DNA from: Guillardia theta CCMP2712
Lineage: Eukaryota > Protista > Cryptophyta
Direction: 5' to 3'
Length of the DNA stretch: 64,000 nucleotides
NCBI RefSeq assembly: GCF_000315625.1
Contig: NW_005434659.1
Location: 917,607-981,606, forward strand
The stretch's first letter is position 1, and each line of letters starts with the position of its first letter. Shown here one piece after another: positions 53,885-58,879 of the stretch. Both the position numbers and the translations under genes were made by a program. The notes under the pieces were generated by a model. It was given only the letters and a program-made list of their open reading frames with translations. It had not been told where the DNA came from and ran no database searches.

Positions 53885-56800
53885 ATGAGAGATTTGATTC
53901 TTCTTCTTCTGATCTTTCACCCCATTCCATCAATGGCACAAAGTCAAGTATCATGCGGAGATTGCACCTTCACAATCTCCGCGGACGGAGTGTTGACAAG
54001 ACAAGCTGCTTGCGGCACAGGATGCACCTCGTTGGACTTATACAGCAAGCGAATATCTCAGATCTCGGACCCCGACGTTTTCAAGGGACTGACTCAGCTT
54101 CAATACCTTGGGTTGGCTGGCAACTCCCTTACGAGTTTGCCATCAGGAGTCTTCGACGGCCTCACCAGCATAACATCCCTGAACCTGCGAATCAACAGAC
54201 TCACGTCATTGCCAGCAGCAGTGTTCGACCAGCTTGTCAAACTTGAGTATCTCTACCTAGACAACAACCGGCTCACCAGCCTTGCAGCAAGAGTTTTCGA
54301 TGCCAACTCGAAGCTATGGATGCTATGGATCTACAACAATGACCTTACGAGCCTGCCGGCAGGGTTGTTCAACAATCTTTCACGGCTTAACATATTGTAT
54401 CTTCAAGGCAACCAGATCTCATCACTTCCTTCAAGGCTCTTCGACCATCTCTCAAGTTTGAGGGTTTTGATCTTGTACGACCTGCAGATGTCGCAGGCAC
54501 CGAATGAACTCTTCCAAAACCTAACGAGCTTGGAGCAGCTCTACGTCTCAACGTTCGATTATGTCCAATGCGGGGGCTGCACGTTTGTGGTGAGTAGCAG
54601 TGGGGAGCTCATGCGACAAGGCACATGCAGCCATGACTGCCAAAACTCCTTACCGCTATCATCACGAGGGATCAAGTCGTTGACGAGCAACGTGTTCCAA
54701 GGGATGCCGTCACTGAGCCTTCTTGATCTATCTTACAATGACTTGACGGAGATACCGGCTGGGGTGTTTGACAGCCTTACCCAAGTATTTAATTTGTTCT
54801 TTCTTTGGAACAAGCTGTCAGCTCTACCTCCGGGTGTCTTCAACAACAACAAGAACCTTGCATACCTTCGGCTTGGAGGTAACATGCTCCAGTCGCTACC
54901 AGCTGGATTGTTCGATAATCTTTCAAACCTTAACGAAGCCTCTCTGTACTACAACAAGCTTGAGAGCCTTCCGGACAGGCTCTTTGACAGTCTGACAAGG
55001 CTGCGTTACATCGACCTTTATGGAAATTACTTGAAAAACTACCCGACAAACATCTTTCACAACCTTCCCAGCCTCATCTCCCTCGGGCTAAGGTACAATA
55101 GCATCTCTTGCATCCCTTCCTCAGCATTTGCGAGTCTTCCTGCCAACATTTACATTGACGTTACACACAATCTTATCCAGTGTCATCGCGCATGGCCATC
55201 CTGGGTACAAACAGAACAAGGCCTGCCAAACTGTGTTGAATATGCAAACGATGCTTTTACAGATGATTGCCTTTGCAAACTCGGATACTACAACAAAACA
55301 AAGGGAAGTTGTGATGCATGTACACAAGGAACCTACAAGAGCGTCATCGGCGATGGATTCTGCTCAGCATGCATGAGAGGAACTTGGTCAAAAAGCACAG
55401 CATCTGCGTGCACAAACTGTGAGCTTGGAAGCTTCAGCAGAGTGCCCGGGGCGTCGGCGTGCGGAGCATGCGCGGCGGGGAGCTACAGCGGAGTGCCCGG
55501 GGCGTCGGCGTGCGGAGCATGCGCGGCGGGGAGCTACAGCAGAGAGCCCGGGGCGTCGGCGTGCGGAGCATGCGCGGCGGGGAGCTACAGCAGAGAGCCC
55601 GGGGCGTCGGCGTGCGGAGCATGCGCGGCGGGGAGCTACAGCGGAGTGCCCGGGGCGTCGGCGTGCGGAGCATGCGCGGCGGGGAGCTACAGCGGAGAGC
55701 CCGGGGCGTTGGCGTGCGGAGCATGCGCGGCGGGGAGCTACAGCAGAGAGCCCGGGGCGTCGGCGTGCGGAGCATGCGCGGCGGGGAGCTACAGCAGAGT
55801 GCCCGGGGCGTCGGCGTGCGGAGCATGCGCGGCGGGGAGCTACAGCGGAGTGCCCGGGGCGTCGGCGTGCGGAGCATGCGCGGCGGGGAGCTACAGCAGA
55901 GAGCCCGGGGCGTCGGCGTGCGGAGCATGCGCGGCGGGGAGCTACAGCGGAGAGCCCGGGGCGTCGGCGTGCGGAGCATGCGCGGCGGGGAGCTACAGCG
56001 GAGTGCCCGGGGCGTCGGCGTGCGGAGCATGCGCGGCGGGGAGCTACAGCAGAGAGCCCGGGGCGTCGGCGTGCGGAGCATGCGCGGCGGGGAGCTACAG
56101 CAGAGAGCCCGGGGCGTCGGCATGCGCAGTGTGTGGTTTGGGACATTTTTCAACTTTTCTTGGATCTTCGGTTTGCTGGGAGTGCAGATGTCAAATGAAT
56201 TATCGCGTAATCGATGGATGTAAGGACGGCATCTCAAACTTTCAATGTAAAGAATGTGAAGCTAACGCGTACAGCGATGGCACAATGACTTCGTGTGTCT
56301 GTCCAGCTGGTCACACAAACACAGGGCCGTCCTGCTCAAAGTGTGCTCCAGGAACGTCTAAGTCAAGTATAGGAGCTGCACCCTGCTCCGTTTGCCTATC
56401 AGGGACATGGTCTACGGAAGCATCATCGGTTTGTGCTGCATGTCCGGCAGGTAGCTTCTCATCAGTCAGCAAGGCATCGGCATGTACAGGTTGTCCCATC
56501 GGTTTCTTCTCTTCTCTTGCTGGCGGCACGACATGTTCGGCGTGCCAGCCAGGAAGCTTCTCAGGCGACGGAGGCGCATCCTATTGCTCGACGTGTCCAG
56601 CAGGAACCTACTCCAGCACGGCAGGGTCCACCACGTGCACAGCCTGTGCTCCAGGAACTTATTCAGCTGGCTCAAAGGCCTCGAGCTGCTTGGCGTGTGC
56701 GGAAGGATCTACATCTGGGATAGCTTCGTTTGCGTGTAGCGAGAGCATTCAAGCTGCGATACCTTCGGAGTTGTCCTCCAAGTCTCAAGTGCAGCCGACC

Positions 56801-58081
56801 GCGACTCCATCGGGAACTTCGGCTTCTTTGCTGACGGCGGTTGGAACGTCAGTGTCGGGATGCCTCGTCCTGGGGATGATTGGATGTTATTGCTGGTGGA
56901 TCAAAAACACAGTCAACACTCGCACTGCAGATGAGGCCTCGCATGCCATGTCAAAGGAAAGCTTAGGGTGCGAGTTGGTGATCGAGAACGGATCTCAAGA
57001 CTGCAAGTTGAGCCTTGTCGACATTTCTAATTTCCTTATCGATGTGCTTCCCCATGGCACAGGTACTTACAAGTCCATGTTCAAAGCGCAATGGAGGCAA
57101 AAGACGCCTGATGGTAACGAGACGTTCATGGACGTTGCAATGCTTGAGTTCAGAGGCAAAGAACACGACGACATGGAGACCTTCCGCAATGAAGTAGAGA
57201 TCATGCGGCTGATTGGGAATCATCCGCACTTGGCAAAGTTTTACTGCCCGACCCAGTTGAGAAACGGTCACTATGCCTTAGTGATGGAGTATGCTCCGGA
57301 AGGTTCTCTAGACAATCTCCTTCAGAAAGCTCAGCAGAGCAGCAAGGCTGTCAGCGACGAGGTGCTACTGCAGGTCGGCAAGCAGGTGTGCGACGGGATG
57401 ATGCAGCTGTCAGTGTACAACGTAGTCCACGGGGACCTCGCCTGCCGCAACATCCTGGTGTTCAGCTTTGACTACTACGACAGGAAGCTCATTCGAGTCA
57501 AGATCTCAGACTTTGGACTTTCTTTGCGATTGACCGCCGCGGCCCCGGCCAGCCTCAGCCGTGAAAGCCGTTATGGCGAGTTGACTGGTGGGCCTCTGCG
57601 ATGGATGGCTCCAGAGGTGATGACGAGGAGGGAGTTCTCAGAGAAGAGCGACATCTGGTCCTACGGCGTCACCCTGTGGGAGCTGTGGACTAACTGCTCT
57701 GTCGTGCCGTACGCGTCCGTCACAGAGGACGAGGAGCTGAGACGAAAGATCATCCTGGGCCACTTGCTCGAGAAGCCGGAGTGCTGCAACCCGAGATTCT
57801 ACGAGATCATGCAGGCATGTTGGAGACCAGACCCGTCCGAGCGACCGAGTTTCACGCAGGTGAAGGAGCAGGTTGAAGATGCTTTCCTGATGTTGCACTC
57901 CAAAGCCCCTGCAGACACCAACAAGGGGGGCGAGTGTCAGATCTGCCTGTCTGACCAGGTCGATTACGCTATCTTGCCTTGCGGCCACAAGTGCCTCTGC
58001 TCTGAGTGCAGGAGCGTTGTAGGGACACAGTGCCCTCTGTGCCGCAGGGACATCCGGGAGATCGTCCGAATCTTCGACTGA
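53885..58081 (+). CDS. Receptor-like kinase: signal peptide, LRRs, Cys-rich (GCC2/ephrin-receptor-like) repeats, TM, tyrosine-kinase-type domain and C-terminal RING finger (1398 aa, intronless)
   Basis: MRDLILLLLIF signal; 24-aa LRRs (LxxLxLxxNxLxxLPxGVF); CxxCxxGxYS repeats; TM LLTAVGTSVSGCLVLGMIGCYCWWI; HGDLACRN, KISDFG, PLRWMAPE and SDIWSYGVTLWE; RING CQICLS...LPCGHKCLCSEC...CPLCR. Confidence 0.95.
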   Translation: MRDLILLLLIFHPIPSMAQSQVSCGDCTFTISADGVLTRQAACGTGCTSLDLYSKRISQISDPDVFKGLTQLQYLGLAGNSLTSLPSGVFDGLTSITSLNLRINRLTSLPAAVFDQLVKLEYLYLDNNRLTSLAARVFDANSKLWMLWIYNNDLTSLPAGLFNNLSRLNILYLQGNQISSLPSRLFDHLSSLRVLILYDLQMSQAPNELFQNLTSLEQLYVSTFDYVQCGGCTFVVSSSGELMRQGTCSHDCQNSLPLSSRGIKSLTSNVFQGMPSLSLLDLSYNDLTEIPAGVFDSLTQVFNLFFLWNKLSALPPGVFNNNKNLAYLRLGGNMLQSLPAGLFDNLSNLNEASLYYNKLESLPDRLFDSLTRLRYIDLYGNYLKNYPTNIFHNLPSLISLGLRYNSISCIPSSAFASLPANIYIDVTHNLIQCHRAWPSWVQTEQGLPNCVEYANDAFTDDCLCKLGYYNKTKGSCDACTQGTYKSVIGDGFCSACMRGTWSKSTASACTNCELGSFSRVPGASACGACAAGSYSGVPGASACGACAAGSYSREPGASACGACAAGSYSREPGASACGACAAGSYSGVPGASACGACAAGSYSGEPGALACGACAAGSYSREPGASACGACAAGSYSRVPGASACGACAAGSYSGVPGASACGACAAGSYSREPGASACGACAAGSYSGEPGASACGACAAGSYSGVPGASACGACAAGSYSREPGASACGACAAGSYSREPGASACAVCGLGHFSTFLGSSVCWECRCQMNYRVIDGCKDGISNFQCKECEANAYSDGTMTSCVCPAGHTNTGPSCSKCAPGTSKSSIGAAPCSVCLSGTWSTEASSVCAACPAGSFSSVSKASACTGCPIGFFSSLAGGTTCSACQPGSFSGDGGASYCSTCPAGTYSSTAGSTTCTACAPGTYSAGSKASSCLACAEGSTSGIASFACSESIQAAIPSELSSKSQVQPTATPSGTSASLLTAVGTSVSGCLVLGMIGCYCWWIKNTVNTRTADEASHAMSKESLGCELVIENGSQDCKLSLVDISNFLIDVLPHGTGTYKSMFKAQWRQKTPDGNETFMDVAMLEFRGKEHDDMETFRNEVEIMRLIGNHPHLAKFYCPTQLRNGHYALVMEYAPEGSLDNLLQKAQQSSKAVSDEVLLQVGKQVCDGMMQLSVYNVVHGDLACRNILVFSFDYYDRKLIRVKISDFGLSLRLTAAAPASLSRESRYGELTGGPLRWMAPEVMTRREFSEKSDIWSYGVTLWELWTNCSVVPYASVTEDEELRRKIILGHLLEKPECCNPRFYEIMQACWRPDPSERPSFTQVKEQVEDAFLMLHSKAPADTNKGGECQICLSDQVDYAILPCGHKCLCSECRSVVGTQCPLCRRDIREIVRIFD
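55437..56127 (+). repeat. Coding 51-bp (17-aa) tandem array, 14 units
   Basis: Unit S[R/G][V/E]PGASACGACAAGSY, near-identical at the DNA level. Confidence 0.97.
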
Positions 58082-58288: not shown

Positions 58289-58402
58289 AGCAAGAGCAAG
58301 AGCAAGAGCAAGAGCAAGAGCAAGAGCAAGAGCAAGAGCAAGAGCATGAGCAAGAGCATGAGCATGAGCATGAGCATGAGCATGAGCATGAGCATGAGCA
58401 AG
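58289..58402. repeat. Compound (AGCAAG)n/(AGCATG)n hexanucleotide repeat
   Basis: Directly visible tandem units. Confidence 0.93.
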
Positions 58403-58879
58403 AGTTTCACAAGATGATTATTCGGATGTATGCTGAATGAACGCTAAGATGCTCAGCTGTGTCGTCCAGCTTCTCCCCAACAGCGATCCTCCACGTCGAG
58501 CGTCTGTTGGAAGAGATTCCACCATAATAGATGGTGATTGGGCCGATCCGAGCGCCTTCAGTCATTGCGTCTTGCTGAGGCACTTCAACGTTGCAGTACA
58601 TCTGCTGCTTCAGTCGTGTGTTACTACCGGAACTAGAGCCCCTCCAGAGGCATCGTCTTCTTGCGACCTCCAGGTAAGCAATGCTGATAGTGTCCGATGG
58701 GTTGGCATCTTCAACCGTCACGCTGATCACTCTGCTGCGGCTGCGGCATCGCTCCACGAATCCGTCGGTCCCATGTGATGCTCGCAGCCCTCACGGTTGA
58801 CCAACGCAGAGGAGCTCCTCTGCGTTGGTCAAGTTAGGTTTGCAACTGTCAGCCGCGCTAGAGATGCTCCCATCTCTTC

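What the first reader, a model, noticed from the sequence alone, without database searches (positions are those of the whole stretch)
57045..57150. WNK-like catalytic lysine swap in a tyrosine-kinase-type domain
Seen: the beta-3 VAxK lysine is absent (DVAMLEF), while the Gly-rich loop reads GTGTYKSMF with Lys (codon 57071-57073) in place of the third Gly. The alphaC Glu (FRNEV), HGD..N and DFG are intact. Established: WNK kinases show this arrangement (GRGSFKTV ... VAWCEL) and are active through the relocated Lys. Inference: convergent 'with-no-lysine' chemistry in a TK-like receptor, which automated tools would mislabel as a pseudokinase.
Basis: partly seen in the sequence, partly recalled or inferred. 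Interest (0 to 1): 0.8.

Follow-up and report, generated by a model that had tools for sequence, protein, structure and literature searches.

The report
Tyrosine-type receptor kinase with moved lysine
A cryptophyte-alga gene encodes a cell-surface receptor whose tyrosine-kinase-type domain carries its ATP-anchoring lysine in the glycine loop, as WNK kinases do. The same swap is conserved across a large, apparently undescribed protist family that is usually fused to a ubiquitin ligase, so the domain is probably a working kinase, though no activity has been tested.

Summary
The AAG codon at 57071-57073 puts Lys1063 at the third-glycine position of the G-loop (GTGTYK). The beta-3 motif reads VAML, with Leu1087 where the catalytic Lys normally sits. 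The alphaC Glu, HGD..N and DFG are intact.

It lies in one 1398-aa ORF (53885-58081, +): signal peptide, LRRs, Cys-rich repeats, TM, tyrosine-kinase-type domain, C-terminal RING. The public annotation splits this ORF into three models. Its kinase model starts at MDVAMLEF and so lacks the G-loop.

The swap is a family trait. In 55 aligned relatives, 54 have Lys at this position and only one has the beta-3 Lys; that one also has Gly back in the loop. Among 361 canonical kinase domains, none has the loop Lys. The other catalytic residues are 89-98% conserved. A tree built without the trait columns places the gene inside this clade.

It is not a WNK: the catalytic loop, fold matches and Pfam scores are all tyrosine-kinase type. 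That makes it convergent with WNK and POMK.

Caveats:
- Only two independent evolutionary contrasts support the covariation.
- Expression of this gene was not shown.
- Activity is untested.

This scan had already noted the same motif at least 10 times on other DNA of this genome, so this is another paralog.

The parts
53885..58081 (+). Single uninterrupted 1398-aa ORF encoding the whole receptor (stop codon included)
   Evidence: ORF list. Pfam hits run along its whole length. Genomic contigs of two runs cover it without joints. The public annotation splits it into three models.
53885..53938 (+). Predicted signal peptide (MRDLILLLLIFHPIPSMA)
   Evidence: Hydrophobic N-terminus read directly; second-highest hydropathy peak.
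54032..55204 (+). Leucine-rich-repeat ectodomain (about aa 50-440)
   Evidence: Pfam LRR_8 at 9.3e-55 in 7 stretches, plus LRR_4, LRR_5 and LRR_14.
55247..56809 (+). Cysteine-rich Ephrin_rec_like / TNFR-like repeat region. It includes a 51-nt tandem array at 55430-56126 (13.7 copies, 97% matches).
   Evidence: Pfam Ephrin_rec_like at 1.8e-34; TRF; 13 CGACAAGSYS units 17 aa apart.
56828..56902 (+). Single transmembrane helix (aa 982-1006)
   Evidence: Highest Kyte-Doolittle peak of the protein.
57056..57871 (+). Tyrosine-kinase-type catalytic domain (Pfam aa 1058-1329)
   Evidence: PF07714 scores 198 bits against PF00069 at 116 bits. The best PDB sequence hits are all tyrosine kinases. AF2 model pLDDT 92.5. 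The Foldseek top 50 are all tyrosine kinases.
57056..57073 (+). Glycine loop GTGTYK. Lys1063 (AAG, 57071-57073) replaces the third Gly and is the proposed ATP-anchoring lysine on strand beta-2.
   Evidence: Lys in 54 of 55 family domains. It is the first residue of strand beta-2 in the AF2 model. Same position as the WNK1 Lys.
57134..57145 (+). Beta-3 motif VAML, with Leu1087 (57143-57145) at the canonical catalytic-Lys position
   Evidence: In the family this position is L 40, M 6, I 3, K 1 of 55.
57191..57193 (+). AlphaC Glu1103, the presumed salt-bridge partner of the lysine
   Evidence: Glu in 52 of 55 family domains; lies inside helix 56-71 of the model.
57428..57451 (+). Catalytic loop HGDLACRN: non-RD, with the tyrosine-kinase-type A-x-R-N signature. 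Asp1184 is the catalytic base and Asn1189 a Mg ligand.
   Evidence: In the family: D 49/55, R 53/55, N 54/55.
57509..57517 (+). DFG motif (Asp1209)
   Evidence: In the family: D 54/55, G 53/55, middle residue Y 30 / F 24.
57935..58042 (+). C-terminal C3HC4 RING finger of the IAP-like zf-C3HC4_3 type, with all eight zinc ligands present
   Evidence: PF13920 at 1.3e-11; ligands read directly. RING found in 22 and U-box in 6 of 42 family proteins.

Best explanation
The ORF at 53885-58081 encodes a type-I receptor: LRR plus Cys-rich ectodomain, one TM helix, a tyrosine-kinase-type domain and a C-terminal RING. I propose that its kinase is catalytically competent and uses Lys1063 on strand beta-2 (the third-Gly position of the G-loop) to hold the ATP phosphates and pair with alphaC Glu1103. 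The canonical beta-3 lysine is replaced by Leu1087. This is the arrangement known from WNK1, but it arose independently inside a tyrosine-kinase-type lineage.

The gene is one paralog of a conserved family found in cryptophytes, green algae and uncultured marine protists. That family is habitually fused to a RING or U-box E3 ligase. The likely logic is that ligand-driven dimerisation of the ectodomain switches on both trans-phosphorylation and the dimer-dependent C-terminal RING, coupling phosphorylation and ubiquitination in one polypeptide.

Shown: the residues, the domain architecture, the family-wide conservation and complementarity of the two positions, the fold class, and non-membership of WNK.

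Inferred: ATP binding through Lys1063, catalytic activity, tyrosine specificity, the dimerisation logic, and expression of this particular gene.
For: - The Lys sits exactly at the WNK1 position: GTGTYK against GRGSFK, VAML against VAWC.
- Family conservation (alignment A2, 55 domains at 28-40% identity to the query): loop Lys 54/55, beta-3 Lys 1/55. The single exception (P0015) has Gly in the loop and Lys in beta-3, so both sites switched together.
- None of 361 canonical domains in the same search has Lys at the third-Gly position.
- The rest of the active site is under the same constraint: alphaC Glu 52/55, HRD Asp 49/55, Asn 54/55, DFG Asp 54/55, tyrosine-kinase-type Arg 53/55, beta-2 Val/Ile 51/55, and beta-3 Ala 37/55 with Val/Ile in the rest.
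- D+N+D are all present in 31 of 39 loop-Lys domains, against 27 of 61 domains that have neither lysine.
- Trees built with the G-loop and beta-3 columns removed place the query inside the loop-Lys clade (FastTree support 89). That clade lies within a superclade without the beta-3 Lys (IQ-TREE support 94).
- The AF2 model is confident (pLDDT 92.5, pTM 0.91). Lys1063 opens strand beta-2, Leu1087 is in beta-3 and Glu1103 is in alphaC. The best structural matches are active tyrosine kinases, including activated FGFR1.
- Precedent that a beta-2 Lys supports catalysis: WNK1 and POMK (PMC13686953, PMC10211241, PMC13519141).
Against: - No biochemical data exist for any member.
- Corrected for relatedness, the two-site covariation rests on two independent contrasts only; the sign test cannot reach significance.
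- Some sub-branches carry HRN (for example the Tetraselmis tandem proteins) and look like genuine pseudokinases, so possession of the loop Lys does not guarantee activity.
- This gene has HGD rather than HRD.
- Expression was not shown. One RNA run, of which 6% was read, gave no coverage, and the public model omits the N-lobe.
- I had no model coordinates, so the Lys1063-Glu1103 geometry was not measured.
Confidence: 0.62

Rival explanations
1. The domain is a pseudokinase: a folded, possibly nucleotide-binding module that serves as a scaffold or allosteric switch for the attached RING. In this reading the conserved loop Lys has a non-catalytic role, such as nucleotide or anion sensing, or a structural contact.
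For: It meets the formal sequence definition of a pseudokinase, because the beta-3 Lys is absent. Related branches have HRN and degenerate DFG motifs. Tandem arrays in the sister clade contain clearly decayed domains. The query is non-RD (HGD).
Against: In this gene and in about 80% of loop-Lys relatives, the catalytic Asp, the Asn and the DFG Asp are all retained. The alphaC Glu and the spine residues are retained too. Domains that lack both lysines keep D+N+D in only 27 of 61 cases. WNK1 and POMK show that the same layout is catalytic.
Confidence: 0.27
2. The G-loop is not part of the real protein. Either the true product is the annotated 317-aa model that starts at MDVAMLEF, or the locus is a silent, decaying paralog. 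In both cases the swap has no functional meaning for this copy.
For: The public model P0121 starts after the G-loop. No RNA reads were laid on the ORF in the one RNA run sampled. The 51-nt array is nearly identical between copies, and short-read contigs break there.
Against: The 4.2-kb frame is open from a signal peptide to the RING, with significant Pfam domains throughout. A kinase lacking strands beta-1 to beta-3 would not fold. Full-length relatives carry the same N-lobe in frame. The closest relative found, in Hanusia phi, comes from a transcriptome set (P0122; 63% identity by BLASTP, 65% by phmmer). The RNA run was only 6% sampled and carries a different organism code from the runs that hold this DNA.
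Confidence: 0.08
3. It is a divergent true member of the WNK family, so the shared lysine placement reflects homology and not convergence.
For: The Lys placement is identical and the G-loop wording is very similar: GxGxΦK, then VAx[C/L]E.
Against: The WNK1 catalytic and P+1 loops read HRDLKCDN, DLG and GTPEFMAPE. The query reads HGDLACRN, DFG and PLRWMAPE. The best 60 PDB sequence hits and the best 50 fold hits are all tyrosine kinases with no WNK among them. PF07714 outscores PF00069 by 82 bits. No WNK-type C-terminal domains are present; there is a RING instead.
Confidence: 0.02

Closest known systems
WNK1-4 (with-no-lysine Ser/Thr kinases)
   Same: The catalytic Lys sits at the third-Gly position of the G-loop on strand beta-2, and a non-Lys residue sits in the beta-3 VAxK motif. 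The alphaC Glu, HxD, N and D-x-G are retained.
   Different: A different kinase group: tyrosine-kinase-type catalytic and P+1 loops against the Ser/Thr type. Different architecture: a receptor with LRR ectodomain and RING, against cytoplasmic WNK with autoinhibitory and CCT-like domains. Different taxa. Chloride sensing is unknown here.
POMK / SGK196 (protein O-mannose kinase)
   Same: It lacks the VAIK Lys and uses a migrated beta-2 Lys, which shows the relocation has arisen more than once (PMC10211241, PMC13519141).
   Different: POMK also has migrated HRD and DFG equivalents, pairs its Lys with an Asp instead of the alphaC Glu, and phosphorylates a sugar. The gene here keeps the canonical HxD, N, DFG and alphaC Glu.
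Metazoan receptor and cytoplasmic tyrosine kinases (FGFR, EGFR, JAK JH1, SYK, KIT)
   Same: They are the best sequence and fold matches (about 26-33% identity, TM 0.79-0.86). They share the A-x-R-N catalytic loop, the P-x-R-W-x-APE P+1 loop and the CW...RP C-lobe motifs. The type-I receptor topology is also shared.
   Different: Canonical GxGxxG and VAxK motifs, HRD instead of HGD, and no fused E3 ligase. Ubiquitination of metazoan receptor tyrosine kinases is supplied in trans, for example by Cbl (my knowledge, not tested here).
Kinase-E3 fusions in plants (U-box kinases of the PUB class; KEG RING-kinase) (my knowledge, not tested here)
   Same: A protein kinase domain and a RING or U-box E3 domain in one polypeptide.
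   Different: The plant proteins have canonical beta-3 Lys kinases of the RLK/Pelle or other Ser/Thr type and are not LRR receptors with a C-terminal IAP-like RING.
Plant and other LRR receptor kinases, including non-RD pattern-recognition receptors (the non-RD link is my knowledge)
   Same: Signal peptide, LRR ectodomain, TM and kinase, with a non-RD catalytic loop (HGD). LRR receptor kinases are known to have been invented repeatedly in eukaryotes (PMC3268121).
   Different: The kinase here is tyrosine-kinase type and not RLK/Pelle. It also has Ephrin_rec_like repeats, the relocated Lys and a RING. Cryptophytes are not covered in that survey.

Membership tests
WNK kinase family | Lys on beta-2 (third-Gly position) and no Lys in the beta-3 VAxK motif | tested here: met
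   GTGTYK / VAML against the WNK1 PDB sequence GRGSFK / VAWC.
WNK kinase family | Ser/Thr-type catalytic loop HRDLKCDN, DLG, GTPEFMAPE | tested here: not met
   The WNK1 motifs were confirmed in PDB 5w7t. The query has HGDLACRN, DFG and PLRWMAPE.
WNK kinase family | Closest sequence and fold relatives are WNK/NRBP | tested here: not met
   The top 60 PDB sequence hits and the top 50 Foldseek hits are all tyrosine kinases, none WNK.
WNK kinase family | WNK-type flanking domains (autoinhibitory / CCT-like) | tested here: not met
   The Pfam scan shows LRR, Ephrin_rec_like, kinase and RING only.
Tyrosine kinase-type domain (Pfam PF07714; TK signatures) | PF07714 above threshold and above PF00069 | tested here: met
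   198.4 bits (cut-off 23.1) against 116.2 bits.
Tyrosine kinase-type domain (Pfam PF07714; TK signatures) | Catalytic loop H-R-D-L-A-A-R-N and P+1 loop P-[IV]-[KR]-W-x-APE | tested here: met
   HGDLACRN (R to G in HRD, otherwise conforming) and PLRWMAPE. In the family, R149 is 53/55 and R200 is 54/55.
Tyrosine kinase-type domain (Pfam PF07714; TK signatures) | Phosphorylates tyrosine | not testable with these tools
   Needs phospho-amino-acid analysis of the recombinant domain.
Loop-lysine kinase-E3 family (undescribed; defined here) | GxGxΦK loop, VAx[LMI] beta-3, A-x-R-N loop, D[YF]G | tested here: met
   Alignments A1 and A2. The query falls inside the clade on trees built without the trait columns.
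Loop-lysine kinase-E3 family (undescribed; defined here) | RING (zf-C3HC4_3) or U-box in the same polypeptide | tested here: met
   The query has PF13920 at 1.3e-11. RING is found in 22 and U-box in 6 of 42 members. The query included the RING, so the hit ranking favours such members.
Pseudokinase (sequence definition) | Lacks at least one of the VAIK Lys, the HRD Asp or the DFG Asp | tested here: met
   The beta-3 Lys is absent, while the HxD Asp and the DFG Asp are present. The definition is known to misfile WNK (PMC13519141).
RING E3 ligase, C3HC4 IAP-like type | Eight zinc ligands in C-x2-C...C-x-H-x3-C-x2-C...C-x2-C spacing at the C-terminus | tested here: met
   Read directly in CQIC...PCGHKCLCSEC...CPLC; PF13920. 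E3 activity was not tested.

The most novel reading that the evidence does not exclude
These proteins are active tyrosine-type kinases that use a beta-2 lysine. That would be a third independent origin of 'with-no-lysine' catalysis after WNK and POMK, and the first in the tyrosine-kinase-type lineage. It would have been kept for a very long time in a large protist superfamily hard-wired to RING or U-box ligases, in which one polypeptide senses a ligand, phosphorylates and ubiquitinates. A further possibility is that vacating the beta-3 position gives these receptors an anion- or osmolyte-sensitive active site, as it does in WNK.
Probability: 0.5. Interest if true: 0.75.

Novelty: new variant of a known kind. 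Interest (0 to 1): 0.62.

Why it matters
Recent reviews still call the WNK lysine placement unique (PMC13686953), with POMK as the only other case I found. A large, deeply conserved, independently evolved family with the same relocation would matter in four ways:
- It would show that the solution is repeatable, here in a tyrosine-kinase-type scaffold outside animals.
- It would provide many natural sequences for asking what the relocation buys.
- It would warn that motif-based pseudokinase calls, and gene models that clip the N-lobe, hide active enzymes in protist kinomes.
- The habitual fusion to RING or U-box domains points to a receptor design in which phosphorylation and ubiquitination are coupled in cis. 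I did not find this described for LRR receptors.

Tried and rejected
- **Word-index searches.** They gave only two close hits: the window's own truncated model, and a Hanusia phi fragment that lacks the N-lobe. I therefore used the exhaustive search.
- **First MAFFT alignment of 494 domains.** It put the U-box group's FGK loop one column off, so these domains were first scored as 'neither'. The family-only alignment A2 puts their Lys in the same column.
- **Independent-contrast test of covariation.** It is underpowered: two informative pairs, both complementary, p = 0.5. I do not claim statistical covariation beyond the raw 2x2 table.
- **RNA evidence.** The one raw RNA run (6% read) laid a single read, in the repeat. 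The runs that hold the DNA are probably genomic. Expression therefore remains open.
- **WNK membership.** Rejected on the catalytic loop, the P+1 loop, the nearest relatives and the domain context.
- **Lys1067 in SMFKAQW.** I considered it as the relevant lysine. It aligns with the common, non-catalytic Lys of the VYKG motif in tyrosine kinases and is not the conserved one.
- **Lys one residue after the beta-3 position in the U-box group (LLKIDG).** It varies (K/R/T/Q) while the loop Lys is invariant.
- **Literature searches.** I found no description of this family. The library is incomplete, so this is not proof of novelty.
- **Geometry.** The Lys-Glu and Lys-ATP distances could not be measured, because the model coordinates are not exposed.
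Full report
**1. What is at the coordinates**

The finding lies in one long open frame, 53885-58081 on the + strand, 1398 aa. Pfam finds the following:
- LRR_8 (9.3e-55, seven stretches) and other LRR models over roughly aa 50-440.
- Ephrin_rec_like Cys-rich repeats (1.8e-34).
- PK_Tyr_Ser-Thr over aa 1058-1329 (198 bits, against 116 bits for the general Pkinase model).
- A C-terminal zf-C3HC4_3 RING at aa 1349-1392.

The N-terminus is a hydrophobic signal-like peptide. The strongest hydropathy peak is aa 982-1006, just before the kinase. The protein therefore reads as a type-I receptor: LRR plus Cys-rich ectodomain, TM, kinase, RING.

- GTGTYK at 57056-57073, with AAG for Lys1063 at 57071-57073.
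- VAML at 57134-57145, with Leu1087 at 57143-57145.
- FRNEVEIM, containing Glu1103.
- HGDLACRN at 57428-57451.
- DFG at 57509-57517.

**2. Is the lysine really 'swapped'?**

HMMER aligns the domain to EGFR as LGSGAFGTVYKGLW...VAIKEL against HGTGTYKSMFKAQW...VAMLEF. Lys1063 therefore occupies the third Gly of GxGxxG, and Leu1087 occupies the catalytic Lys. The WNK1 chain in PDB 4pwn reads GRGSFKTVYKG...VAWCEL, which is the same placement. Reviews place the WNK catalytic Lys on strand beta-2 and call the placement unique (PMC13686953). POMK is a second case (PMC10211241 and PMC13519141).

An AlphaFold2 model built on a family alignment is confident (pLDDT 92.5, pTM 0.91). In it, Lys1063 is the first residue of strand beta-2 (residues 24-34 of the model). 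Leu1087 lies in beta-3 (40-50) and Glu1103 in the alphaC helix (56-71). I had no coordinates, so no distances were measured.

**3. Source and annotation**

The window's own public protein, P0121, is only 317 aa and begins MDVAMLEF, after the G-loop. It lies on scaffold JH992979.1 of assembly GCA_000315625.1. From memory, that accession is Guillardia theta CCMP2712. This fits the nearest homolog, which comes from the cryptophyte Hanusia phi (P0122; 63% identity by BLASTP, 65% by phmmer).

The public annotation covers the 1398-aa frame with three separate models: locus L001 2806-3900, 4246-5007 and 6001-6954, where window coordinate = locus coordinate + 51127. The relocated lysine is therefore invisible in the public proteome.

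**4. Relatives**

The word-index searches found few close relatives. The exhaustive HMMER search over 1.84 billion representatives found 503 proteins at E ≤ 1e-30. Among the best 150, many match the query end to end, kinase plus RING, at 35-41% identity.

Named members come from these sources:
- The cryptophytes Hemiselmis rufescens and Rhodomonas abbreviata.
- The green algae Ostreobium and Tetraselmis.
- Tara Oceans and other metagenomes.

Of 42 full-length members scanned, 22 carry the same RING type and 6 carry a U-box. The ranking was biased, because my query included the RING. One member, on a 7-kb metagenome contig, is WW + U-box + kinase.

**5. Covariation and conservation**

I extracted 494 kinase domains from all the proteins fetched and aligned them. 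Among the 461 with a complete N-lobe:

| Class | Domains |
|---|---|
| Canonical: beta-3 Lys, and Gly (298) or a small residue at the third-Gly position, never Lys | 361 |
| Loop Lys without beta-3 Lys | 39 |
| Neither lysine | 61 |
| Apparent 'both' (a misaligned degenerate domain) | 1 |

Seventeen of the 'neither' domains carry a loop Lys one MAFFT column off. Most belong to a U-box-kinase group with the loop wording FGKTIY, and the family-only alignment A2 puts their Lys in the same column as the others.

Counts in A2 (55 domains, 28-40% identical to the query):

| Position | Count |
|---|---|
| Loop Lys | 54/55 |
| Beta-3 position | L 40, M 6, I 3, K 1 |
| AlphaC Glu | 52/55 |
| HxD Asp | 49/55 |
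| Asn | 54/55 |
| DFG Asp | 54/55 |
| Tyrosine-kinase-type Arg | 53/55 |
| Beta-2 Val/Ile | 51/55 |
| Beta-3 Ala | 37/55 (Val/Ile in the rest) |

The one sequence with the beta-3 Lys (P0015, a PARP-kinase-U-box protein) is also the one with Gly in the loop.

D+N+D are all retained in 31 of 39 loop-Lys domains. The figures are 303 of 361 for canonical domains and 27 of 61 for domains with neither lysine. The loop Lys is thus as conserved as the catalytic residues. The active site of its bearers looks maintained, unlike that of relatives that lack any lysine.

**6. Phylogeny**

All trees were built with the G-loop and beta-3 columns removed.
- The FastTree of 461 domains places the query in a clade of 41 (support 89), 36-38 of which carry the swap.
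- The sister clade of 31 (support 83) holds the U-box and tandem HGDLxCxN kinases, which also lack the beta-3 Lys.
- An IQ-TREE run on 117 rows recovers the 72-member superclade plus one canonical sequence with support 94. It nests the canonical P0015/P0018 pair inside the loop-Lys clade.

The swap is therefore ancient and mostly inherited. The few changes go in complementary directions. However, only two independent contrasts are informative, so the sign test has no power. I rest the case on deep conservation and not on a covariation statistic.

**7. Not a WNK**

WNK1 has HRDLKCDN, DLG and GTPEFMAPE (PDB 5w7t). The query has HGDLACRN, DFG and PLRWMAPE, which are tyrosine-kinase signatures.

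The best 60 PDB sequence matches are tyrosine kinases: EGFR, TYK2, FGFR, TIE2, ABL, CSK and RET. So are the best 50 fold matches: JAK3 JH1, SYK, FGFR1/2 including an activated FGFR1-substrate complex, KIT and EGFR, with TM 0.79-0.86. The resemblance to WNK is convergent.

**8. Expression**

Contigs from two 2011 runs, which are probably the genome project's DNA, cover the ORF without joints. They break in the 51-nt tandem array. The single raw RNA run, of which 6% was read, laid one read, in the repeat. Expression of this copy is therefore not shown. The Hanusia relative P0122 comes from a transcriptome set.

**9. Reading**

Most likely (about 0.6), this is a working tyrosine-type receptor kinase that anchors ATP with Lys1063, coupled in cis to a dimer-type RING E3. 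The main rival (about 0.27) is a pseudokinase module that regulates the RING. Minor rivals are that this copy is silent or truncated (about 0.08), or that it is a true WNK (about 0.02).

HGD makes it a non-RD kinase. From my own knowledge, non-RD kinases paired with LRR ectodomains are typical of pattern-recognition receptors. That parallel is only a lead.

**10. Prior notes of this scan**

The same motif has been noted at least ten times on other pieces of this genome, three times with follow-up reaching the same conclusion. I re-derived the family conservation independently.

This report adds:
- the split and truncated public gene model;
- trees built without the trait columns;
- the double reversion in P0015/P0018;
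- the U-box sister clade;
- the weakness of the phylogenetically corrected covariation;
- the POMK precedent, which corrects the earlier wording 'known only from WNK'.

Noticed in passing
window 55430-56126: A 51-nt tandem array (13.7 copies, 97% matches) encodes near-identical 17-aa Cys-rich units (CGACAAGSYS...PGASA) inside the ectodomain. Short-read contigs of runs X1 and X2 break here, so the copy number in the assembly may be uncertain. The near-identity suggests recent expansion or concerted evolution of the ligand-binding region.
   Followed up: partly
window 53933-58081 (locus L001 2806-6954): The public annotation of GCA_000315625.1 covers this single 1398-aa ORF with three separate gene models of 283, 254 and 317 aa. 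The kinase model starts at an internal Met, after the G-loop.
   Followed up: yes
window 58289-58404: An (AGCAAG)n microsatellite of 19 copies lies just downstream of the stop codon. On the minus strand it reads as a poly-Leu/Met ORF.
   Followed up: no
P0015 / P0018 (metagenome and Logan proteins): PARP-kinase(-U-box) proteins nest inside the loop-Lys clade but have GRGSFG plus VAVK. This looks like a reversion of both positions together.
   Followed up: partly
P0125-P0134, P0016, P0022, P0374 (Rotaria sp. assemblies and metagenomes): A sister clade of N-terminal U-box kinases has an invariant FGK loop, HGDLACRN and DFG, and no fixed beta-3 Lys. Many are labelled as bdelloid rotifer proteins. 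I did not examine whether they are rotifer genes, horizontal acquisitions or contaminants.
   Followed up: no
P0123 (Tetraselmis sp. GSL018, labelled 'Janus kinase 2'), P0248, P0314, P0324: These are tandem or single loop-Lys kinase domains with HRN or HRR in place of HRD. They are probably true pseudokinase offshoots of the same family, and the 'JAK2' label is misleading.
   Followed up: no
L002 128-4455 (ENA metagenome contig): A family member with WW + U-box + kinase sits next to a gene encoding WW plus zf-TRAF domains. This hints at a ubiquitin-signalling neighbourhood.
   Followed up: no
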